A program made the translations under genes and the position numbers. Below, piece by piece: positions 9,531 through 58,712 of a DNA stretch of 64,000 nucleotides; the stretch's first letter is position 1; each line of letters begins with the position of its first letter. The notes below the pieces were generated by a model. That model did no database searches. It had not been told where the DNA came from and saw only the letters and a list, made by a program, of their open reading frames with translations. Location of the stretch: positions 124,001 to 188,000 of the IMG/VR virus record IMGVR_UViG_3300035181_000357; one strand, given 5' to 3'.

Positions 9531-12500
9531 GTGGTAGGAACAACTATGGCGATAACATTTACTCTAAATTTTAATTCCGTACAGAACCTAGTATATACAC
9601 TGAGTAACAGTGTAGCTAGGATAGCTGCTGTTACAGCGGGTTCTAGTGGCCAGTTAGCCACTATATCTGGAGCTACTGGTGCCTCGGGGACTATAAACTG
9701 GTCTCTATCCAATGCCCCAACATGGCTTACTATCAATAGTTCTGGGATAGTCTCATTCGCTGGAGTAGATGTCCCAAAGATTGGGATATACAACATCTCA
9801 ATCCTGGCAACAGATTCTGGAAATCCAACCAATTTTTCTCTGTATCCTATCACCTTGGAAGTTCTACCAGCTTTCGACCTAAGAGAGTCTGGGAGTTTAA
9901 CAGCAATAACAGCAACAGCCTTGGATGCTTCTCTATCCAACGACATCTTGGCATATGGTGCGGATGGTGTAACTCCTCTGACAGATGTAGAGATTTTGGT
10001 CGTTGGGTCTCTGCCAAGCGGATTAAATCTAAGAACTACTAAAGATTCGGCCACATTATATGGTGATCTGAGTTCATTAACCGATCTTCGTGGTGGTATT
10101 AAATCTGTCGGGTTAAGTCAGAATGTTCAGTTAAGGGCTTTTAAACCTGGAACCTTTTATGATCACCCAGATAGAGCAGCTCTACTAACACTAACTTATA
10201 ATGTATCTGATGCAACACCGGGGTCGATAGAAACTGCAATCTCTGGATACGTAGATTCTGTTTCTAGTCCCTTCATTAGATTACATGCTAGACCAGAAAT
10301 TAAACTAGGTAAGGGAACTGTCACCACATACGCTTGGACAGCTTCTGGAACTGCAACTGGTTCATTCTTAGATTCTGCAAATGCTGCTACTACAACATGG
10401 TCCCCAACCAGTACAGGCCAAGTAATCTTCAATCTCGTTGTCGGTGCTACTGGGGCCTCTGCTCCATCGTTTGCTGCTGATAGCTTAACCTTAGATATAG
10501 CAACTGGAACCAATTGGACATCAACTGGGAAACTTAAGATTGTACCAGCAGATACCACTAAGTTGGAGACTCAAGGGTATTCATCTGAAGTAACTATCTT
10601 TGGAACCAAGTTAACCGATCTTCAGACAGGACAGACTGCAACATTGACTCCAACCGTAGTCGCTGTTGGTACTGCCCCTGTAGCATCTGCTCCTGTGATC
10701 TCGATTCTTGGGACACCAGATAACACTTATACTGATACTAATTCCACCAACGGGGATATTGCTGAAGTAGCTTTCACAATACCAGCTGGTGCCATCATCG
10801 GTGATAAATATGTTATCACTATCGCAGCCGATACTGGTGCAGGTCGTGTTGGAACTTTAGTATACTACGTCCTGTGTACAGGAAATCAAAAGATAGTAAT
10901 CACCCCATCCACCTCTACGATCTCTATAAATAATGGTGTTACGTATACTTCTCTGGCTCCTATTGTCACTATGACAAGCTCCCAATCTGGTGTTTCATTC
11001 GCTTTAGTAAATGCACCAGCAGGATTGTACATTGATGCAAATGGGAATATCCTAGGAAAAGCTTATAAGGGTGGTACAGGTGTAATGCGGGTTTACTATG
11101 GTAAATCCTCATTCTTATATGAAGATTATATTACTATCTCATATACTGTAACAGAGGTAGTTGGTCTCATTAGTCCAACATTATCTACCCCAACCCCTAC
11201 TATCGCAGCTGGTACAAACCTAAAAATTGATTGGGGATTCACTGGTACAGCTACAAATTTCTATATCAAGAGAGATAATGATACAGAGATTACCCTAGCT
11301 GGTAATATTACTACCTATACATTCAATGCCGTAACCACAAACACCGTTATTGGTCTACGTGCTGTATCTGCTGTAGGAGAATCCTTTGCTGCTCCTCTTG
11401 AGGTATTAGTAGGGGCCACTACTGTCACTAGAATACCACAGTCTCCAACTATTGCATATTTATACCAAGACAACATCCTGGAACTCAACTGGTCTCCAAC
11501 CCAGATTGGAGCCGATACAACATATAGTTTATATTCTAATTGGGCTATCTGGACTAGATATAATTCTGGTGGTATTGAGAATCTCGTCGCTACTCTTACT
11601 GGTAAAGAATCTGGTGGTACAGACACTGCTAGAAATGCAACTCTATCACTAGTAACCAATCCCCCAGGAGCTCTGGATACTGTATATGTTGATATGCAGG
11701 CCATTTCCAGCAGCCCAACATCTGTTCTGAGTTCTTTTAGATGGAATAAATCTGATGGAAATGCTCCCTTTGGGATGTTATCATTCCCAAGATTTGGAAC
11801 TGTCGTACTAGATAAGAACACTGCATCCAAAGCAGAACCAATCAAAGTCACTATAGCTGGATTTACTGGTGATAAATGGCGTGTGGTATTTGCTGATGGC
11901 TCTACTACATCTTTTCTACCTATGTCTGCAACCTCTACAGTAATCTCTTTCGTTACTGGTGGGACAAATGAAAATATCAGAATTGAAGTAGAATCTGATT
12001 ACTCCTCAAGTCTACCAAGCGTTAGATTACGAAGCGTCGTTAAAAAGAGTGTGTTCGTTATCGATCAAGATTATGTAGTACCATCTTCTACTGATCCTCT
12101 CGGGAATGTTGGATTTGGTGGTGATGCAGGATTTGAAATAACAGATGCGAACTCTGGATTAGTGACACTACAACCCTATATATCCATCGTTAGATCGTTG
12201 GTAAAGGATGAAGTAACCAATGAATTGAAATTGATGGTAGCTACTTCTAGAACCCAGGATAGTTCAAGTTCAATGGGTACTATGGCTATCGATGTGTTTC
12301 CAATCTTGGGAAGACCCCATATCAAGGACTTGATCAAGCCTCTACCAAGTATCACATATGATGCTCAGATCTTAAATCCTGTAAAGATTTCGACAGATTT
12401 GATTCAAGATATCATCATCGGCCAATTCGTAGAAATCAAGATGGTAGCTTCTGGTGGTACAGGACCGTTCAGTTGGTATGCAGATTCTCTCCCTACAGGA

Positions 12501-15500
12501 TTGAGTATTAGTACAGATGGTACTATCTATGGTTCTGTTTTCCAACTTGGGACATTCACAATTACTGTTTCTATTGCTGACAGTTCAGATCCAGCATTCA
12601 TTGATGAGAAGATATTCAATCTCGTTGTCAAGAGTGATTTAGCTGTCCAGACTTCTAGTGTACCAGCTGCTGCAACTAATTCAATGTACAGTCAGGTTCT
12701 TCTACCATCTGGTGGGGTAGGACCATTCCAATGGTCTCTAGTAGGTGGAGAGCTCCCTCTAGGGTTGACTGTAAATGTTGAAACTGGTGAAATAAGAGGA
12801 CGTGCCACTACATATAATAGTGTTTCAGATTTCTTAAAGACCTACACCTTTGTAGTACAGGTAGTAGATTCTGTCGGAGCAAAAGCAAGTAGACAACTAA
12901 CGATGGTTCTAAATCCATCTGTCTTGACAGTATCTGATCTCGATCAGCCTGTTATTTATCGAGGTGAGAAATTCAGACTGACTTCTAATATCTATGGTGG
13001 AAAAGCACCATACACAAATCTAACTGTGACAGATGGTACTGGGGTTTTAACTACTGTAAATAGTCATATTCACGATGGTGTGATTGAATTCGATGTCCCT
13101 GAAACCGTTACTACTGGGAACTACACTTTCTCTGTATCTGTAACAGACGATCTGGGTACTGTATTATCCAAGACTCTCCTATACTCAGTACGACCATATA
13201 TTGGAGAATTCAGAGTTGTCGGTTCATACATTGATAACACCTACAACACTACAGAAAGTGCTGATCATTTCATCCCTGTTACCACAGTAGCAGGTGCAGT
13301 AACCACGCTGACCGCTCCAGCTGCTCCTTTATCGAATGGGTTAACAGTCACATATAATGACACTACAAAACAGATAAATGTAAAGGGTCCCATAACAGTT
13401 GGTGGGAATCTCGAATTCCCTGTAGCATTTTCTATCACAGGAACAGCCTTCGATGGTGCACTGACTAAAGTGTTCACAATGAATGGTTCTACAGGCCTTG
13501 GAACAAAGGCAAGTCCAACAACTCAGACTATAACACCAAAGCCATATAAGGTAGGATCGTTAGTAACCCTAGATGCCAACCGTCCATACTACAATTCCTC
13601 AACAAACTCTGGAAATTCTCTATTATATACTAGAGTTCAACCAGGACAAACTCTTCCAGCAGGTCTCTCTCTAGATATGAAGACCGGACTCGTATATGGA
13701 ATCGTTGAAAACAATTTAGTTACCTCTACCATCCTTGAAAGGGTTGTCATCACTACGAATGATGTGGTTGGTGTAATAACCATCAATTTCAATATCAAGG
13801 ACGATAAGTCTCTCATCTTAGATACCAGCAATTTGGGTGTTGCGAAAAGAGGATTACCATATACAGGTTCGATCGTTGCTCAAGCTCCTGCAACTGGTCC
13901 TCTTACTCTCACTATTATTAAGGGACAACTTCCAGCAGGTATCTCAACTTCTATCACTGGTACTACGATCAATTTCTCAGGAACACCAACTGTCGGTGGA
14001 TATACAGACATCTGGATGGAGGTTCAGGATCTCTTAGGAGATAAGGAACTCTTGTATAAGAGATTTGAAGTAAGCTATTCTAACGCTGTAAGTCTTCAGA
14101 CATCTAGTATACCCCTCATCATCCAGAATACAGCATATAGTTTCCAACTATCTGCGATCGGTGGTACTACCCCATATACATATGCTACAACATCTGGAAC
14201 TCTCCCAGCAGGTATAACCATATCCTCTACTGGTCTAATTTCTGGTACTACTACAGTAGTAGATTATAACTCAGATATAACTTTCCAGGTGACAGATAGT
14301 AGTTTATCTACAGATTCTAAGATCTTTAATGTTAAAACAGATCCTGGCTATACCATCACTACGGTAACAGGAACAAGTTCTGTAGGTAACTGGCCACAAG
14401 ATCAGCAGGATCTATCGACGATCCAAAGAGTTAATCTTCCGATAGTACCTACATTGCCTGGTGTTCCTATTCCTGTAAATCAGCTATTGCTGGCCTTTAC
14501 AGTTAGGATTGTCGGACTTGATAGTGTAAATACTAATGTGTCCGTTGATGATCCCAACTTGACTGCAACTCTAGTTACAACTCAGATAGAGAATGGTGGT
14601 CTAGTAGGATATGCTAGAATCACAAATCCTGCTAAGACTGCTCCAACTACACTAGGAATATCTGGAACAAGAAATTTCAATCTGACTGTATCAAACCCAT
14701 TAACAGGAAGATCTAAGACACAAACTCTTACCTATGTGGTCCTTCCAGTCAGTGGTACTACTGGCATGTTGGAGGTAACTACCAATGATGGATATAATGT
14801 CGTAACTCCAAGAACAGGTCAGAATGAATTAGCATTCATGGAAACCTACCCTGTAAATGTAAATATACAGACTAATAATGTATCTACATATACGACATTT
14901 ATCGCTGGGTTAGACCTTACTACGTATCCAATGGATGTAGTATCCCTAGGTCTCATCTCCGTAGTAGATAGTACGCCTGGACTATCTGGGAGATTCTCCT
15001 TTGAATACTTCGGGGTAACAGGGGGACAAGCCCAGATAAAGATGAATTACCTTGGATCAGAGTTTGGAACACCAACTCCTGGCCAATACTTAAAACTAAG
15101 AGTTAATGATGTAGCATTCTTAGATACTACATCTGGCCCAAATTATGTGATGGATGTTTTTACAGGGACTCTAAGTGTCGTAGCTCCTAGAGAGATAACT
15201 CTCAATGTCCTACAACTTGTAAAAGTATCTCCAATATCCACTACTACCAGTATATTCCTAAATGAACCATATACTTTCCAGGTCAATTTTGACGCCCCAT
15301 TAAATATAGCTCAGAACCCAACATTCACTTGGAGTGGATTGCAGGGTGTGTCTAGTGAATCTTTTATCTTGAATGCTAGTGGACAGAAAATAGGGTATAA
15401 GATTCAAGGTCTCTGGCCTAAGAACAATGCAGAAACATATCCTAAGTTGTATAACATCGGAATCATGATGGGTGAGACTCTCAAGTTTACTAATGGATTT

Positions 15501-29821: not shown

Positions 29822-31045
29822 ATGGCGGCTCAAGGCCTAATGGTTCTAAATTCAGCATTCTTCGGATCTAGAGATCTATTTTGGATCGATGATCCAGATC
29901 CAGATGTTAGTGGATATAATGTTTATAGAGCACAAGATTCTGTTGGGCCATGGACTAGAATCAATATAGAGATCGTCCCTGGTCATACATATAGGGATGA
30001 AACAACACTCCTTAAAATCTCATATAAAGTTAAGGCAGAGGATTGGGTAGAATTCGGTGAATATGGAAGATATGGATTTCGTGTACCAGAAAAGTCAATC
30101 TATTCAGACATAGCTAAGGGTCGTGCATTCTTAGCCACATCTCCTGATGATGTAGAACTGACAATAGCTGGTGAGAAGATCAGACCATCACAGGTAGAAG
30201 GTTTGGATGGAACTGTATGGATGCCTCAGACTTCCGTTCTTAAAAGAGATGGTGGAAGAACAGAAACTAAATTAGGCCCAGCTCTTACAAAAGATCTAGA
30301 TATCCAGGTTGTATATAGGACTCTACAAAATTATGTAGATATCTATCAAGATATGACTAGAACGTACTACTGTGTCGTTCCAATAAATTCATTAGGACAA
30401 GAGACTGAATTCCCTGGTGATCATGAAATAGTCAATACCATGGAAATCGATAAGATGGACTATATGCAAGCAGAGATGGTCAGGAGAAATGCCTGGCTAT
30501 TTGAGCAGGTAGCAGAACCTGCTTATCTGATGCTTCGTAGAACGAAGGGTCTTCCTTGTGGTTGTACAGATGTAGATACTAAGCAACCTAGAACTGGCTG
30601 TAAAGTATGTTATGAAACAGGTATTCAAGGTGGTTACTATGGACCTATTGATATTCTGTTTGTTGACCCAGACACTGAAATCAGTAGAATGATTGATGAG
30701 AATGGTGTTAAAGTAGAGAGGAAATCAAGGTCATACCTAGGACCTTCACCGATTGTCCAGAATGGTGACCTGATCATCAGAAGAAATGGTGAGAGAATGA
30801 CGATAGGTAATGTCACATATAAGTCACCAAGAGGTGTTTTACTTCAACAAGAATTCGATGCCATATTACTTCCTTCCAGAGATACTAGGTACTTTATTCC
30901 AGTTTATAAGGATTATGAACAAGTAATATACGATCCGTCTACGGATGCAAAGGGTAATGAGCCTGTCACTTTACCAGACACTGGGTGGGAGAATCCAACT
31001 ATCCCAGCAGGTAGAACTGTCACCTTTAAGAGGATTCAAGCATGA
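29822..31045 (+). CDS. Probable neck/head-closure protein with Cys motif
   Basis: PCGC...GCKVCYETG and FN3-like N-terminal VSGYNVYRA; LQQEFD C-terminus. Confidence 0.45.
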   Translation: MAAQGLMVLNSAFFGSRDLFWIDDPDPDVSGYNVYRAQDSVGPWTRINIEIVPGHTYRDETTLLKISYKVKAEDWVEFGEYGRYGFRVPEKSIYSDIAKGRAFLATSPDDVELTIAGEKIRPSQVEGLDGTVWMPQTSVLKRDGGRTETKLGPALTKDLDIQVVYRTLQNYVDIYQDMTRTYYCVVPINSLGQETEFPGDHEIVNTMEIDKMDYMQAEMVRRNAWLFEQVAEPAYLMLRRTKGLPCGCTDVDTKQPRTGCKVCYETGIQGGYYGPIDILFVDPDTEISRMIDENGVKVERKSRSYLGPSPIVQNGDLIIRRNGERMTIGNVTYKSPRGVLLQQEFDAILLPSRDTRYFIPVYKDYEQVIYDPSTDAKGNEPVTLPDTGWENPTIPAGRTVTFKRIQA

Positions 31046-31569
31046 TAGATTTCGGAAATATATGTGAGGGAGATGTTCTCCTATTCAAGAAGAATATTAA
31101 ATATAAGATATCCTTAGTATCCAAGGTTATACGCTTGATACAGGGAAATGAATATGTACATGCCGCTATAGTAGTTTCAGTAGTTCCAGGGCTTACACCG
31201 TTAGTAGCTGAGGTTGATTCTGATTTTAAGTCTAGGGTAGTACCTGTCTCCGTTTCTATGGAACGAGGAACTCCTGATGTTTATAGACTATCTACAACAT
31301 ATACTTTCAGATCGAAGTCTGCATACACTTACGCTCTAGACACTGTAGGTCAAAAGTATGGATATTCTAGAATCGTGGATTCTGCTATAAACCACTTCTT
31401 AGGGAGATTCGATCATGCTTATAATTACAGAGCGTGGTTCTCACCCGATACTAAAGATATCTGTTCTACACTAGTATCTAAGATACTAAATATAGGATTT
31501 GGTGCTAAATATGATAGATTTAGTGAGCCTGATGACTACTGTAAGTCACCATTTATAAGAATATCCTAG
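31042..31569 (+). CDS. Permuted papain-like NlpC/P60 amidase (YaeF/YiiX-like)
   Basis: GDVLLF, YVHAAIV (His) precedes ICSTLV (Cys). Confidence 0.75.
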   Translation: MIDFGNICEGDVLLFKKNIKYKISLVSKVIRLIQGNEYVHAAIVVSVVPGLTPLVAEVDSDFKSRVVPVSVSMERGTPDVYRLSTTYTFRSKSAYTYALDTVGQKYGYSRIVDSAINHFLGRFDHAYNYRAWFSPDTKDICSTLVSKILNIGFGAKYDRFSEPDDYCKSPFIRIS

Positions 31570-31614
31570 CATAGAACGAGGTCTAGAGTATTACCTTAAA
31601 GGGGAAGATATACT

Positions 31615-32169
31615 ATGACTTGTATTGTCGGGATGGTAAAAGATAACAAGGTATGGATCGGTGGTGATTCCGCAGGGTCAGACAACTCATCTATCTGTAT
31701 TCGTAGAGACCCAAAAGTGTTTAAAAATGGCCATTTCTTAATCGGTTTCTGTGGAAGTTTCAGATTTGGTCAGTTACTACATTATAAGTTCACCCCACCA
31801 TTAAACTCTGAAGAGAAAGATGCTTTCAGCTTCATGGTGACCGATTTTGCTGATGCAGTTAGAGAATTAGCGAAAGAACATGGTATCTTGAAGATAGAAG
31901 ATAATGTAGAAGAGTTAGAAGATATCCAACTCTTAATAGGATATCAAGGAAGATTATTCACTCTCGAAGAAGATTTTCAGATTGGTGAAGTAGAGAATGA
32001 ATACTATGCGGTTGGTGAAGGTATGGATCTGGCATTGGGATCTATGTATACTACCAGTAGACAGAAACGTGGATATACACCAAGGAAGAGGCTCGAGATG
32101 GCATTAGAAGCTTCAGCACTCTTCTGTAAGAGCGTGGCTCCCCCGTTCGTTATATTAGGATTACAATAA
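31615..32169 (+). CDS. Ntn-hydrolase, HslV/proteasome-beta-like peptidase
   Basis: MTCIVG N-terminal Thr nucleophile, GGDS, AVGEG..LALGS. Confidence 0.75.
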   Translation: MTCIVGMVKDNKVWIGGDSAGSDNSSICIRRDPKVFKNGHFLIGFCGSFRFGQLLHYKFTPPLNSEEKDAFSFMVTDFADAVRELAKEHGILKIEDNVEELEDIQLLIGYQGRLFTLEEDFQIGEVENEYYAVGEGMDLALGSMYTTSRQKRGYTPRKRLEMALEASALFCKSVAPPFVILGLQ

Positions 32170-32399
32170 TGAAAACTATGAGTTTCTATGAAATTTCCAT
32201 AAGATTTATAAAGAGTTACTTTGATGGGATAACTGTTGAAGTAGGTCAAACATGGAGAGATCCAGAAATAGATACATTCAATCTAGATTTTGTTATTGCC
32301 GAGATAGATAAGAATAGAGTATATCTAAGAAGTTCGTCATTCGTGAGAACTAATAAATCTATCCGACATCTAAAGACATTTTATGATTTCGTGAAGTAA
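32169..32399 (+). CDS. Hypothetical protein
   Basis: 76-aa ORF translationally coupled to upstream gene. Confidence 0.5.
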   Translation: MKTMSFYEISIRFIKSYFDGITVEVGQTWRDPEIDTFNLDFVIAEIDKNRVYLRSSSFVRTNKSIRHLKTFYDFVK

Positions 32400-32457
32400 T
32401 AATGAACTGAAGGACTTTGAACCCTTCTAATCCGTCGCCTCCGGGGACAAAACAAAT

Positions 32458-32477
32458 ACTCGCTTAACGAAAGGAGT
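32458..32477 (+). promoter_or_regulatory. ROSE-like RNA thermometer hairpin over hsp20 SD
   Basis: ACTC(G)CTT pairs with AAGGAGT with bulged G; contains U(U/C)GCU motif. Confidence 0.55.
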
Positions 32478-32481
32478 CATT

Positions 32482-32904
32482 ATGACCAGATACCGAGTAG
32501 ATATCTTTAACCAACTCGATCCCTTCTTCCTAGGTTTCGAATCCATGTTTGACCGCTTCGATCATTTCTTTGGAGCAAAGCAAGGTAGCTATCCACCTCA
32601 CAATGTTGTAGAGGTTGGAGCTAACAAGTTCGATATTGAGATCGCTTTAGCTGGCTTTAAAAAGTCAGATATTGATATCTCTGTCTTTGAACACAATTTA
32701 ACCATTAAACACGTCAAGACAGAGAAAACTGAGGATGACGGTGTACGATATCGTGGGATCGCTAAACGCGAATTCACCAAGATCTTCACCCTATCTGATG
32801 CGATCAATGTTATTGGTGCTGAATTAGAAGATGGTCTGTTAAAGATTCATCTCGAGAAGATTGATCCTACGAAAACTGCTGCTGTAAAAATTAACATCAA
32901 GTAA
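32482..32904 (+). CDS. ibpA: Small heat-shock protein Hsp20/IbpA family
   Basis: YPPHNVVE, IEIALAGF, YRGIAKREF, AELEDGLLKI. Confidence 0.9.
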   Translation: MTRYRVDIFNQLDPFFLGFESMFDRFDHFFGAKQGSYPPHNVVEVGANKFDIEIALAGFKKSDIDISVFEHNLTIKHVKTEKTEDDGVRYRGIAKREFTKIFTLSDAINVIGAELEDGLLKIHLEKIDPTKTAAVKINIK

Positions 32905-32923
32905 CTTCGAAGGGTTCAAAGTC

Positions 32924-32949
32924 AAAGGCCACCAATTGGTGGCCTTTTT
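32924..32949 (+). terminator. Intrinsic (probably bidirectional) terminator
   Basis: AAAGGCCACC-AATT-GGTGGCCTTT followed by T run, between convergent genes. Confidence 0.85.
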
Positions 32950-32977
32950 CATTACTAATTTTCAAGAAGATCCATTA

Positions 32978-34183
32978 CTAACTTCTTACGTAATATTTCC
33001 CACCTGCCACAGTCATGTTATCTGAGAAGATGACGTGCTCTGGGATAGCTTGCTTTAAGAATGTATCGACATGCCAGACACAGAAGCTTTGATGACTCTT
33101 ATTCATTCTCTCTTGATATTCAAAGTCAATCTTAGCCATACAACCCATGACGACCCAGTGAATAGGTCCCATAGTAAGGTTGGCAGTTGATCTCATATCA
33201 GTACGATGTGTATGACCACTGCATCCAGACATTCCGAATCCGTTATCACCATGATGATCAACCACAACAGTGTTGTAGTATACTTTGAAGTTGTTCTTGA
33301 TCTCAGTACGAACATCAGCTGGTTTGAAAGCTGCAAAGTCGATTCTGGATACTAGGTTGATTTCAAATTCGTCTAGGCCTAGGACCTTGGAAAGTGAAAT
33401 ACCCATTAGATCCATGAGGGGTCTGATTTGAGGGCTACGATCAGCCATATACTTCATAATCCTGAGATCATGGTTCCCGATTACAAAATCGATTTGAGTG
33501 TTCGGACAAACCTTACGCAGTGGCTTGAAGATGTGATCCCTGACATAGTCAAAGGCTTCTTTCAAGTTCATCTGTCTTGGATCATTCGTAAATCTGCTAA
33601 ATTCAATCTCATCAAATACGTCGCCAGCAAGAACGATAGTATCTGGTTTCAATCTGGCAGCAACATCCAAGAACGTCTTCCAACAGAATGTATCTAGTTG
33701 CTTATCATGTAAGTCACTACATACCATTACCGTCTTATATCTCTCAGAATCTTCGGGACGCTCGTACTTGCCCAGGTAAGGTTGAACTTCCATTTCGAAG
33801 AAACCTCGATATCTGTCAGTAGCCGCATGACGAGCTATATCTTTCTCGATCTGAGCTGCACCTCTATGTAAATCCAACCCGGCCTTACGTCTAAATTCTT
33901 GGAAGGTTCCAAACTTGTTGGACCAACAACGATCACTATACTTTCCATGAATTCGATAGAAATCTCGAGTTATGTACTTGTATGGATTCTCGTCTTTTAC
34001 TTTTCTAAGATCTTCGATCAGATCCTCGGACTTTGCAGTCGGATCATATTTCTTAGAAAGTTCAGATAGAAGAGCTTGATGTGATTGGGATCTTTTGGAT
34101 TCAGCGTCTACACGCTTCTGTTCTAGTTTCTCTGGTACAATCTTTTTTGATGCCACTCTCGTTCTCCGTGAAAGACTTCTCAT
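32978..34183 (-). CDS. Calcineurin-like metallophosphoesterase with N-terminal extension
   Basis: SDLH, AGDVFD, GNHD, GHTHR motifs. Confidence 0.8.
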   Translation of the reverse strand: MRSLSRRTRVASKKIVPEKLEQKRVDAESKRSQSHQALLSELSKKYDPTAKSEDLIEDLRKVKDENPYKYITRDFYRIHGKYSDRCWSNKFGTFQEFRRKAGLDLHRGAAQIEKDIARHAATDRYRGFFEMEVQPYLGKYERPEDSERYKTVMVCSDLHDKQLDTFCWKTFLDVAARLKPDTIVLAGDVFDEIEFSRFTNDPRQMNLKEAFDYVRDHIFKPLRKVCPNTQIDFVIGNHDLRIMKYMADRSPQIRPLMDLMGISLSKVLGLDEFEINLVSRIDFAAFKPADVRTEIKNNFKVYYNTVVVDHHGDNGFGMSGCSGHTHRTDMRSTANLTMGPIHWVVMGCMAKIDFEYQERMNKSHQSFCVWHVDTFLKQAIPEHVIFSDNMTVAGGKYYVRS

Positions 34184-44494: not shown

Positions 44495-45508
44495 ATGCAT
44501 GAATATGCGATCGTCATCGGAAGATTTCAACCCTTCCATCTGGCCCACAAGCAACTGCTCGAGAAAGCGTTCGAGGTTGCGAGTAGGGTCATAATTATTT
44601 TAGGTAGCCATGCAGCTGCCCAAACTTCCAAGAATCCCTGGACTAGTCAAGAACGAATCAAGATGATCGAGTCGGCTCTGACACAAGAGCAGAGTGATCG
44701 CATTACATTCCTTCCAGTCCGCGACTATCTTTACAATGAGAATGTCTGGTTGTCTGAAATTCAGCAGAAGGTTAAGGTGGTCACCAACAACTCCAAATCG
44801 GTCGTGTTGATTGGTCACATGAAGGATGAGTCAAGCAGTTATCTCAAGACTTTCCCTCAGTGGGAATTCATTGAGACCAAGGCCGCTTTTGATCTGTCTG
44901 CTACTGATATTCGCCATTCTCTGTTCACCACTGAAGGATGGGCTGACTCAGCTCAAAAAGTTCCTCAGAAGGTGCAAAACTATCTGGTCAACTGGTGCCG
45001 AACTTCGGACTATGTTCGCCTGAAGGAAGAGTACACCTACCTCCAGAAGTATAAGGCTTCTTGGGCTGTGGCTCCTTATCCTGTGACCTTCGTGACTGCT
45101 GACGCTGTCGTGATCAAGTCTGGTCACGTCCTAGTGGTCAAGCGTGGTGGAAATCCTGGCAAGGGCTTGATCGCTCTCCCTGGTGGATTCGTAAATCAGA
45201 ATGAAAGCCTTGATGTGGCTTGCCTTCGAGAGCTCAAGGAAGAGACCAAGATAAAGGTCAGCATGGATAAGCTGACCTCTGCTCGTCAAACCAACCACGT
45301 GTTCGACCACCCACAGCGTAGTCTCCGTGGTCGTACTATCACTTATGCCTACCTGTTCGACTTGGGTAAAGAGGGAGACCTCCCAACCGTCAAGGGTTCA
45401 GATGATGCCGAGACTGCTTTCTGGATGCCTATTGGAGATGTATATTCCAATGAGGCTACCTTCTTCGAAGATCATCGCGACATCATTCTCTATTTCCTCG
45501 GCCGATAG
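44495..45508 (+). CDS. nadM: Bifunctional NMN adenylyltransferase / Nudix hydrolase (NadM-Nudix)
   Basis: IGRFQPFHLAH (HxxH), SATDIR, ALPGGF...RELKEET Nudix box. Confidence 0.95.
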   Translation: MHEYAIVIGRFQPFHLAHKQLLEKAFEVASRVIIILGSHAAAQTSKNPWTSQERIKMIESALTQEQSDRITFLPVRDYLYNENVWLSEIQQKVKVVTNNSKSVVLIGHMKDESSSYLKTFPQWEFIETKAAFDLSATDIRHSLFTTEGWADSAQKVPQKVQNYLVNWCRTSDYVRLKEEYTYLQKYKASWAVAPYPVTFVTADAVVIKSGHVLVVKRGGNPGKGLIALPGGFVNQNESLDVACLRELKEETKIKVSMDKLTSARQTNHVFDHPQRSLRGRTITYAYLFDLGKEGDLPTVKGSDDAETAFWMPIGDVYSNEATFFEDHRDIILYFLGR

Positions 45509-58596: not shown

Positions 58597-58712
58597 GATC
58601 CCATAGCTCAGTTGGACAGAGCAACAGCCTTATCGCACTCCTGACCAGGTGGGTTTGGAACTGCATGGCTCTAAGCTGTAGGTCGCTGGTTCGAGCCCAG
58701 CTGGGATCACCA
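58597..58712 (+). tRNA. tRNA-Arg(UCU) interrupted by 39-nt insertion in the anticodon loop
   Basis: GATCCCA/TGGGATC acceptor, A20, ACAGC/GCTGT stem, T arm, ACCA; removing 58631-58669 restores loop CTTCTAA. Confidence 0.8.

What the first reader, a model, noticed from the sequence alone, without database searches (positions are those of the whole stretch)
32409..32949. hsp20 mRNA bracketed by a perfect 15-nt 5'UTR/3'UTR complement with an alternative local pairing
Seen: GACTTTGAACCCTTC (32413-32427) is the exact reverse complement of GAAGGGTTCAAAGTC (32909-32923), which lies between the stop codon and the terminator. The 5' copy can alternatively pair locally (GAAGG 32409-32413 with CCTTC 32423-32427). 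Inference: long-range end-to-end pairing that stabilises the transcript, creates a processing stem, or switches with the thermometer. An invertible or mobile cassette is the alternative.
Basis: partly seen in the sequence, partly recalled or inferred. Interest (0 to 1): 0.6.

Follow-up and report, generated by a model that had tools for sequence, protein, structure and literature searches.

The report
Phage hsp20 mRNA end-to-end stem
The small heat-shock gene of this giant phage is flanked by two perfectly complementary 15-base stretches, and a distant relative keeps the pairing with a different sequence, so they most likely tie the two ends of its messenger RNA together, as in the Bacillus subtilis hbs mRNA.

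Summary
GACTTTGAACCCTTC (32413-32427) is the exact reverse complement of 32909-32923. The two arms bracket a 140-aa Hsp20 gene (32482-32904), and the 3' arm abuts a palindromic terminator (32924-47).

It is more than chance. hsp20 is the only one of 193 genes in the 210-kb phage record with such a flank complement. The only relative of the clade (L011, Hsp20 56% identical) has a 13-nt perfect complement at the same two places with an unrelated sequence. Eleven of the 13 aligned pairs changed on both sides, while the leader between the arms is 82% identical.

Folding keeps the stem in both mRNAs (pair probability at least 0.95 from 15 to 65 C). Eighty other phage hsp20 loci lack it.

The arms lie inside the module, between a conserved promoter-like box and a family-wide 5' hairpin. 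No recombinase or inverted form was found, although the module is flipped between the two phages.

Best reading: an RNA-level 5'UTR/3'UTR panhandle that shields the mRNA ends, closely like the 14-nt hbs interaction. A thermometer switch is not supported. RNase III processing stays open. There are no RNA data and only two lineages. It is a new member of a known kind.

The parts
32394..32403 (+). Promoter-like box AAGTAATAAT, conserved just upstream of the 5' arm in both phages (L011 3921-3930).
   Evidence: In L011 it is the -10 of a sigma70-like call, TAGAAA-16-AATAAT. GTAATAA is enriched in sense orientation upstream of genes in this record: 13 of 38 copies fall in about 5% of the sequence. 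Its role as a promoter is an inference.
32409..32427 (+).
   Evidence: -5.0 kcal/mol. There is no equivalent in L011. The minus-strand version was flagged as terminator-like by the simple scan.
32413..32427 (+). 5' arm of the long-range duplex, GACTTTGAACCCTTC, 69 to 55 nt before the ATG.
   Evidence: L011 has its 13-nt arm at -67 to -55.
32434..32448 (+). Conserved leader hairpin GTC-(G bulge)-CC-TCCG-GG-GAC, a member of a hairpin shared by many phage hsp20 leaders.
   Evidence: Across 42 loci, 203 of 210 stem cells are paired, against a mean of 127 when the right arms are shuffled among loci.
32459..32476 (+). Conserved box CTCGCTTAA (32459-32467) followed by the Shine-Dalgarno AAAGGAG (32470-32476).
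   Evidence: The box CT[TC]GCTT[AT]A lies 21-29 nt before the ATG in 43 of the 44 (of 82) phage hsp20 loci that carry it. There is no Rfam match.
32482..32904 (+). hsp20 coding sequence, 140 aa.
   Evidence: PF00011 E 4.5e-14. phrog_432 E 2.7e-33.
32909..32923 (+). 3' arm GAAGGGTTCAAAGTC, 5 nt after the stop codon and directly abutting the terminator stem.
   Evidence: In L011 the arm starts 10 nt after the stop and ends 3 nt before a stable hairpin.
32924..32949 (.). Palindromic, bidirectional terminator-like hairpin AAAGGCCACC-AATT-GGTGGCCTTT plus a T run. It is shared with the convergent metallophosphoesterase gene (32978-34183, minus strand).
   Evidence: I15, 12-nt perfect arms. It folds as a 10-bp hairpin. 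The simple scan does not call it, probably because the extended stem consumes the T run (my inference).
32948..32960 (-). Weak inverted copy of the promoter-like box (AATTAGTAATGAA on the minus strand, 11 of 13 matches to 32394-32406).
   Evidence: I19; 12 of 500 shuffles do as well. It is absent in L011, so its meaning is uncertain.

Best explanation
The two arms are a selected RNA-level long-range interaction. The first bases of the hsp20 mRNA pair with the 3' UTR just before the terminator hairpin. This closes the roughly 540-nt monocistronic mRNA into a panhandle whose 5' end is double-stranded and lies next to the 3' hairpin. Shown: the complementarity, its conservation by wholesale covariation in the only relative, its predicted stability, and its position inside a conserved module made of promoter-like box, arm, family-wide hairpin, conserved leader, ORF, arm and terminator. 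Inferred: transcription starts at the conserved box, a few bases before or within the arm, and the closed ends hinder 5'-end-dependent or leader-directed RNases and 3' exonucleases. That would lengthen or gate the life of the mRNA, as the 14-nt 5'/3'-UTR interaction does for B. subtilis hbs. In other phage lineages the same spot between promoter and conserved hairpin is empty or holds a local 5' hairpin. The arm therefore looks like one of several ways to keep the 5' end paired.
For: Exact 15-nt complement at the stated places. L011 (Hsp20 56% identical) has GCAAGGTCATCAG / CTGATGACCTTGC at -67 from the ATG and +10 from the stop, with 0 of 500 shuffles reaching this length. Eleven of the 13 aligned pairs changed on both sides and all remain Watson-Crick. 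The arms are 15% identical, against 82% for the leader and 66% for the CDS. The MFE and centroid folds of both mRNAs contain the stem (z -5.6 and -6.5). The duplexes are -24.0 and -22.1 kcal/mol, with pair probability at least 0.95. hsp20 is unique among 193 genes of the record. The stem is absent from the other phage hsp20 loci tested, where the longest match is 10 nt and AT-rich; 1500 mismatched flank pairs gave a maximum of 12. An abundant marine group also lacks it. The box AAGTAATAAT is conserved outside the 5' arm. In the wider family the -10 or TATAAATA element lies 0-9 nt before the conserved hairpin, so in this clade the arm is an insert at the predicted 5' end. L098, L145 and L265 carry a long local hairpin at that spot. 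[quoted passage not shown]
Against: There are no RNA data: no RNA run holds the locus, so the transcription start, the 3' end and the pairing itself are unobserved. Only two independent lineages exist in all collections searched. Perfect Watson-Crick arms with no G-U pair do not separate RNA-level from DNA-level selection. Complete turnover of the arms could reflect re-creation by inverted duplication rather than stepwise compensation. If the L011 start lies 6-8 nt after its -10, 2-4 nt of its arm are lost. The window's box has no good -35. The host and its RNases are unknown.
Confidence: 0.5

Rival explanations
1. The stem is an RNase III (double-strand-specific) processing or decay site. It would form in read-through transcripts from the co-directional upstream genes and be cut, either to release a monocistronic hsp20 mRNA or to destroy it (icaR-like).
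For: In both phages the upstream gene is co-directional and no terminator is predicted before hsp20, so the arm would also be present in polycistronic RNA. In the window the 15-bp helix abuts the 10-bp terminator helix without a spacer, which could stack into about 25 bp. The perfect Watson-Crick pairing fits a dsRNA substrate. In icaR, 5'/3'-UTR pairing creates an RNase III substrate (PMC7821165).
Against: Helices of 13-15 bp are shorter than the roughly two helical turns typical of RNase III sites (textbook knowledge, not tested here). L011 has a 3-nt spacer before its hairpin. No RNase III gene was found in the 69%-complete phage record. The host is unknown.
Confidence: 0.2
2. The arms are a DNA-level feature: inverted repeats left by, or mediating, inversion or insertion of the hsp20 cassette, with no role in the RNA.
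For: hsp20 is flipped relative to the conserved metallophosphoesterase-SLT block between the window and L011/L050. The site is a hotspot: relatives L155 and L160 carry other small ORFs there. The window also has a weak outer inverted copy of the box. The perfect arms would fit a recent inverted duplication.
Against: The conserved box lies outside the 5' arm in both phages, and each phage has its own hairpin outside the 3' arm, so the rearrangement breakpoints are not at the arms. Flipping only the segment between the arms would separate the gene from its promoter-like box and terminator. The arm sequences are unrelated in the two phages, unlike recombinase sites or transposon ends. There is no resolvase and only a sub-threshold integrase-like hit 7 kb away. 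There are no other copies in the record and no target duplication in the flanks. No joint or inverted contig appears in four assemblies (contigs cannot exclude rare forms). A neutral relic would not stay perfect at the same two places in lineages 44% diverged in protein.
Confidence: 0.12
3. The duplex is part of a temperature switch. It would alternate with the local 5' hairpin or with the leader structure to control translation on heat shock.
For: The gene is a heat-shock gene. The 5' arm can form a local hairpin. The SD and AUG are partly paired and predicted to open with temperature (SD unpaired 0.28 to 0.41 in the window, 0.11 to 0.36 in L011, from 37 to 65 C).
Against: The duplex keeps a pair probability of at least 0.95 up to 65 C. 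It lies 55 nt or more from the ATG and does not overlap the SD. The local hairpin is -5.0 against -24.0 kcal/mol and is absent in L011. The leader fold is no more stable than shuffles and shows no covariation between the two phages. No ROSE, fourU or other thermometer model matches.
Confidence: 0.05
4. Coincidence: two unrelated chance complements.
For: About 0.3 exact inverted pairs of 15 nt or more within 1.5 kb are expected per 210 kb (my estimate). One other such pair, 16 nt long, exists in the record.
Against: The chance of a complement of 13 nt or more anywhere in a 120 x 80 nt flank pair is about 1e-4 (my estimate). None was seen in 1500 mismatched flank pairs. It recurs at the same offsets in the only relative.
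Confidence: 0.03

Closest known systems
B. subtilis hbs mRNA 5'/3'-UTR long-range interaction (Braun, Durand and Condon 2017, PMC5737220)
   Same: A short mRNA for a small abundant protein. A fully complementary 14-nt stretch (here 15 and 13 nt) in the 5' UTR, next to a 5' hairpin, pairs with a stretch just upstream of the terminator. The duplex energies are similar (-19 against -24 and -22 kcal/mol).
   Different: In hbs the 5' segment lies downstream of two hairpins and overlaps an RNase Y site. Here it lies upstream of the hairpin, at the predicted 5' terminus. The hbs interaction is reported as not conserved in close relatives (PMC7821165), whereas this one is kept by covariation. This one is in a phage gene with an unknown host, and no experiment exists.
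S. aureus icaR mRNA 5'/3'-UTR pairing (Ruiz de los Mozos 2013, PMC3868564) and RNAIII 5'/3' pairing
   Same: Intramolecular pairing between the two UTRs of one bacterial transcript.
   Different: The icaR 3' UTR pairs with the Shine-Dalgarno region, blocks translation and makes an RNase III site. Here the SD is 40 nt or more away from the arm.
5'-terminal stem-loop stabilisers (E. coli ompA type; from general knowledge)
   Same: A base-paired 5' end with few or no unpaired nucleotides. Other phage hsp20 leaders have a local hairpin at the predicted 5' end.
   Different: The partner strand is 480 nt away in the 3' UTR instead of local.
RNase III processing stems that bracket rRNAs or phage T7 cistrons (general knowledge)
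   Same: A stem formed by sequences on both sides of a functional unit.
   Different: Those stems are 20 bp or more, or bipartite with internal loops. This one is 13-15 bp.
Invertons (invertible DNA segments flanked by inverted repeats)
   Same: Short inverted repeats flank a segment whose orientation differs between relatives.
   Different: There is no invertase, the repeats are not conserved in sequence, both control elements lie outside the repeats, and no second orientation is detected.

Membership tests
Bacterial mRNA 5'/3'-UTR long-range interactions (hbs type) | Complementary stretches in the 5' UTR and 3' UTR of one gene, with the 3' one just upstream of the terminator. | tested here: met
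   15/15 nt at -69 from the ATG and +5 from the stop, abutting the terminator palindrome.
Bacterial mRNA 5'/3'-UTR long-range interactions (hbs type) | Pairing maintained by compensatory change. | tested here: met
   This is natural variation only. In L011, 11 of 13 aligned pairs changed on both sides and all are Watson-Crick. Only two lineages are available.
Bacterial mRNA 5'/3'-UTR long-range interactions (hbs type) | Both stretches lie on the same transcript (start upstream of the 5' arm, end downstream of the 3' arm). | not testable with these tools
   No RNA run holds the locus. The indirect evidence is the conserved promoter-like box upstream and the absence of a conserved -10 between arm and hairpin.
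Bacterial mRNA 5'/3'-UTR long-range interactions (hbs type) | Pairing changes RNase cleavage or half-life. | not testable with these tools
   This needs mutants and decay assays.
RNase III processing stem | A double-stranded helix of about two turns (about 20 bp or more). | tested here: inconclusive
   The arms alone are 15 and 13 bp. In the window, stacking on the adjacent 10-bp terminator helix would give about 25 bp, but L011 has a 3-nt spacer.
Inverton or invertible cassette | A site-specific recombinase encoded nearby. | tested here: not met
   There is no resolvase. The only integrase-like hit scores 17 bits (cut-off 27.1) and lies 7 kb away. The neighbours are an HslV-like peptidase, a C92 peptidase, a metallophosphoesterase and an SLT.
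Inverton or invertible cassette | Both orientations present in a population. | tested here: not met
   There are no joints in four assemblies, and contigs span both arms in a single orientation. Contigs cannot exclude rare forms.
Transposon or MITE terminal inverted repeats | The same ends occur in several copies or relatives, with a target-site duplication. | tested here: not met
   There is one pair only in 210 kb. The L011 arms are unrelated. The flanks CTGAAG and AAAGGC are not a duplication.
RNA thermometer (ROSE, fourU and similar) | The temperature-labile structure occludes the SD or AUG. | tested here: not met
   This applies to the arms. They do not overlap the SD or AUG and stay paired to 65 C in silico. 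No thermometer family matches at E up to 10.
Hsp20 / alpha-crystallin (the bracketed gene) | An alpha-crystallin domain. | tested here: met
   PF00011 E 4.5e-14 over residues 45-139. phrog_432.

The most novel reading that the evidence does not exclude
The panhandle is a portable, sequence-free 'closure' that these giant phages attach to an accessory gene module. The arms are re-made by inverted copying when the module moves or flips, and the juxtaposed paired ends serve more than passive protection. For example, they could be the substrate of an RNA-end-joining or end-modifying enzyme that circularises or marks the mRNA, or they could insulate the module from read-through in either orientation.
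Probability: 0.05. Interest if true: 0.8.

Novelty: new member of a known kind. Interest (0 to 1): 0.5.

Why it matters
Intramolecular 5'/3'-UTR pairing is known from only a handful of bacterial mRNAs (RNAIII, icaR, hbs). Reviews note that such 3' UTR functions are usually not conserved between relatives. I found no phage precedent in the searched papers.

In this example the pairing, but not the sequence, is kept across two phages whose proteins are only 56% identical. That is the kind of natural compensatory evidence the known cases lack.

If confirmed, it would show that phages use end-to-end mRNA closure to control the life of an auxiliary stress gene. It would also offer a compact natural design, two 13-15-nt arms next to a terminator, for stabilising transcripts.

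The comparison also exposed a structured leader shared by many phage hsp20 genes that matches no Rfam family.

Tried and rejected
- **Phage records:** blastn of the locus against 50,697 phage records gave no match.
- **Viral contigs, single protein:** searching with the single Hsp20 protein found nothing.
- **Metagenome contigs, protein:** a two-sequence alignment found nothing, because the patterns fell on the variable N-terminus.
- **Leader DNA scans:** a 15-mer in viral contigs (59 hits) and a 17-mer in metagenome contigs (66 hits) and genome contigs (37 hits) returned chance matches only, apart from L050, which is the L011 contig. One chance hit (L201) is a contig titled as a human-gut metagenome and was not used further.
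- **More clade members:** word searches with both Hsp20 proteins found no third lineage.
- **RNA evidence:** none of the four runs that hold the locus is on record as RNA.
- **Inversion:** no joints were found in four assemblies.
- **Sigma32 or sigma70 promoter inside the arm:** TTTGAA and TCTAAT in the window are not conserved in L011. I rejected this by reading the sequence.
- **tRNA T-arm or att-site idea:** it was prompted by GGTTCAAA in the arm. There is no tRNA at the site, and the one-mismatch copy at G000 52232 lies in coding sequence.
- **Similarity between the window 5' arm and the L011 3' arm:** 7 matches in the best register, which is not above chance.
- **Second bracket in the record:** a 13-nt complement around G000 78068-78721 appears to lie in neighbouring coding sequence (read from the flanks, not checked against gene calls) and is probably chance.
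- **Leader thermometer fold:** it is no more stable than shuffles and has no covariation between the two phages.
- **RNAalifold on the 42-leader MAFFT alignment:** it gave no structure because the loops were misaligned. A register-anchored count was used instead.

Full report
**Context.** The window is bases 124,001-188,000 of a 210,611-base IMG/VR virus record, estimated to be 69% complete. It is a giant phage with a tRNA array and a tmRNA. The sequence occurs in microbial-mat and sediment metagenomes. The finding concerns a 140-aa Hsp20 gene at 32482-32904 (PF00011, E 4.5e-14; phrog_432). Upstream, on the same strand, lie a C92-type peptidase, an HslV-family peptidase and a 76-aa ORF. Downstream, a metallophosphoesterase gene converges on hsp20, followed by an SLT transglycosylase.

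- GACTTTGAACCCTTC at 32413-32427 is the exact reverse complement of 32909-32923.
- The 3' arm begins 5 nt after the stop codon and ends exactly where the palindrome AAAGGCCACCAATTGGTGGCCTTT (32924-32947) begins.
- The local pairing GAAGG/CCTTC is real but weak, at -5.0 kcal/mol against -24.0 for the long-range duplex.

**Is it more than chance within this genome?**
- Only two exact inverted pairs of 14 nt or more lie within 1.5 kb of each other in the whole record.
- hsp20 is the only one of 193 called genes whose upstream and downstream flanks share more than 10 complementary bases.
- None of 500 shuffles reached 15 nt.
- On its own this is suggestive rather than decisive, because about 0.3 such pairs are expected per genome (my estimate) and many windows were read.

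**The decisive evidence is comparative.** The Hsp20 protein has one close relative in 5.8 billion clustered proteins: P0002, 56% identical, on a 58.7-kb JGI contig (L011, the same contig as L050).
- In L011 the flanks again carry a perfect complement, GCAAGGTCATCAG at -67 to -55 from the ATG and CTGATGACCTTGC starting 10 nt after the stop. It is followed 3 nt later by a stable hairpin (0 of 500 shuffles reach this length).
- The positions match the window (-69 to -55, and +5), but the sequence does not. Aligned by distance from the ATG, 11 of 13 pairs differ on both sides and all are Watson-Crick.
- The arms are 15% identical. The stretch from the leader hairpin to the ATG is 82% identical and the coding sequence 66%.
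- In 1500 mismatched upstream/downstream flank pairs from phage hsp20 loci, the longest complement was 12 nt.
- The seven other contigs that carry the window's protein are identical in this region and add nothing.

**Predicted folding.**
- The MFE and centroid structures of both full-length mRNAs contain the end-to-end stem directly beside the 3' hairpin (z -5.6 and -6.5).
- In the partition function the mean pair probability of the arms is 0.95 or higher at every temperature from 15 to 65 C.
- The duplex therefore does not behave as a thermometer. It also does not overlap the Shine-Dalgarno sequence or the start codon.

**The arms sit inside a conserved module.** Comparison with 80 other phage hsp20 loci showed that 44 of the 82 loci analysed share a leader with these elements in order:
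- a promoter element, either sigma70-like or the T4-late-like TATAAATA (my reading of the sequences; the T4 consensus is from memory);
- 0-9 nt later in most loci, a hairpin;
- an A/T spacer;
- the box CT[TC]GCTT[AT]A;
- the Shine-Dalgarno sequence;
- the ATG.

The hairpin has a covarying 5-bp stem, a bulged G and a CC/GG core. Across 42 non-identical leaders, 203 of 210 stem cells are paired, against a mean of 127 when the right arms are shuffled. The register was chosen per sequence, which flatters the count somewhat.

The window (hairpin 32434-32448, box 32459-32467) and L011 belong to this family. In these two phages, however, the arm is inserted between a conserved promoter-like box and the hairpin. 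The box is AAGTAATAAT at 32394-32403. In L011 it is the -10 of a sigma70-like call. Other lineages (L098, L145, L265) have a long local hairpin at that spot.

None of the other loci has a 5'/3' complement; the longest is 10 nt and AT-rich. I infer that the extreme 5' end of these mRNAs is kept base-paired, and that this clade achieves it with the 3' UTR as partner.

GTAATAA-type motifs are enriched upstream of genes in this phage. Thirteen of 38 copies lie in the roughly 5% of sequence that is sense-upstream of a gene. This supports a promoter role for the box but does not prove it.

**The DNA-level alternative.** Three results favour it:
- The module really is flipped. To the right of hsp20, gene order is conserved between the two phages (metallophosphoesterase 59% identical, SLT and further genes). 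hsp20 converges on the phosphoesterase gene in the window and is co-directional with it in L011/L050. The left flank is not syntenic.
- Relatives whose phosphoesterase is 58-61% identical (L155, L160) carry other small ORFs at this site and no hsp20. The site is therefore a variable hotspot and hsp20 is an accessory module.
- The window has a weak inverted copy of the box beyond the terminator (11 of 13 matches, 12 of 500 shuffles do as well). It is absent from L011.

More evidence goes against the arms being the recombination sites:
- The conserved box lies outside the 5' arm and travels with the gene in both phages, and a hairpin lies outside the 3' arm in each.
- An inversion between the arms would cut the gene off from both.
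- The arm sequences are unrelated in the two phages.
- There is no resolvase, and only a sub-threshold integrase-like hit 7 kb away.
- The 15-mer has no other copy in the record.
- Contigs from four runs show no joint, and two of them span both arms in one orientation. Contigs cannot exclude rare variants.

**Mechanism.** The closest studied case is the B. subtilis hbs mRNA. There, a fully complementary 14-nt stretch next to a 5' hairpin pairs with a stretch just upstream of the terminator (-19 kcal/mol). Compensatory mutants show that it restrains RNase Y cleavage and the 3' decay pathway (PMC5737220).
- By analogy, I take the hsp20 panhandle to protect the mRNA ends. It would deny a single-stranded 5' end to 5'-end-dependent nucleases, or mask a leader cleavage site.
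- An RNase III role cannot be excluded. In the window the 15-bp helix can stack on the 10-bp terminator helix. In both phages read-through from the upstream co-directional gene would include the 5' arm. No RNase III gene is present in the partial phage record.
- icaR and RNAIII are looser analogues (PMC7821165, PMC3868564).

**Limits.**
- There are no RNA data.
- There are only two lineages despite all searches.
- The host is unknown.
- Perfect arms without G-U pairs do not separate RNA-level from DNA-level selection. The complete turnover of the arms may mean they are re-made by inverted copying rather than by stepwise compensation.

**Verdict.** The long-range pairing reading is supported by covariation and folding. 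The thermometer switch and the invertible-cassette role of the arms are not supported. This is a new, phage-borne member of the small known class of bacterial 5'/3'-UTR interactions, and it is of moderate interest.

Noticed in passing
window 32434-32476; L011 3947-3996; 42 further loci such as L076 2945-3003, L101 763-818, L265 about 1440-1500: Many phage hsp20 genes (44 of 82 loci) share a structured 5' leader. It consists of a hairpin with a covarying 5-bp stem, a bulged G and a CC/GG core, then the box CT[TC]GCTT[AT]A, then the Shine-Dalgarno sequence. No Rfam family matches it. U(U/C)GCU next to the SD recalls ROSE-like ibpA thermometers (from memory). E. coli IbpA is reported to bind its own 5' UTR (PMC10474464), so it may be a thermometer or an autoregulatory site.
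   Followed up: partly
window 32394-32960 compared with L011 3906-4480 and L050 7525-9212: The whole hsp20 module is in opposite orientation relative to the conserved metallophosphoesterase-SLT block in the two phages. Relatives L155 (1352-1552) and L160 (4173-5081) have other small ORFs at this site and no hsp20, so it is a plasticity hotspot.
   Followed up: partly
window 31042-32169: An HslV-family peptidase (31615-32169, phrog_1040) and a C92 papain-like amidase (31042-31569) lie directly upstream of hsp20. This may be a small proteostasis cluster. A more distant phage (L012) places hsp20 between ClpX-like and ClpS genes.
   Followed up: no
G000-wide; in window coordinates, for example about 37762, 39097, 42494 and 55102: The promoter-like motif GTAATCTAGT (with GTTAC[CT] about 18 nt upstream) lies 21-33 nt before the ATG of several genes. 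A related GTAATAA class lies upstream of others. The gene at window 44495-45508 has TTTTGACTTCGAGTAATAATTATG followed by a 5' hairpin, nearly identical to the L011 hsp20 promoter region.
   Followed up: partly
window 32948-32960 (minus strand) compared with 32394-32406: There is an inverted, imperfect copy (11 of 13) of the promoter-like box just beyond the terminator. The module therefore reads box-arm ... arm-terminator-box. This is not seen in L011.
   Followed up: partly
window 32244-32256 and 32542-32554: A second perfect 13-nt complement (GGTCAAACATGGA) links the upstream 76-aa ORF to the hsp20 coding sequence. About five such pairs are expected per genome, so it is probably chance.
   Followed up: no
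window 58597-58709: Rfam calls a 113-nt tRNA here that ARAGORN does not list. It may be an intron-containing or otherwise unusual tRNA at the head of the tRNA/tmRNA array (58.6-64 kb).
   Followed up: no
G000:C1:200584-200599 and 201754-201769 (outside the window): This 16-nt inverted pair is the only other perfect one of 14 nt or more within 1.5 kb in the record. One arm lies in a gene and the other near a gene start.
   Followed up: no
G000:C1 about 12510-12620 (outside the window): A long (CTCTT)n microsatellite lies upstream of the gene at 11520-12509 (minus strand).
   Followed up: no
window 32978-34183 (minus strand): The metallophosphoesterase carries an N-terminal homing-endonuclease-associated repeat (PF18780). 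It is called with different starts (392 or 401 aa) in near-identical strains. It has over 100 relatives in large phage contigs.
   Followed up: no
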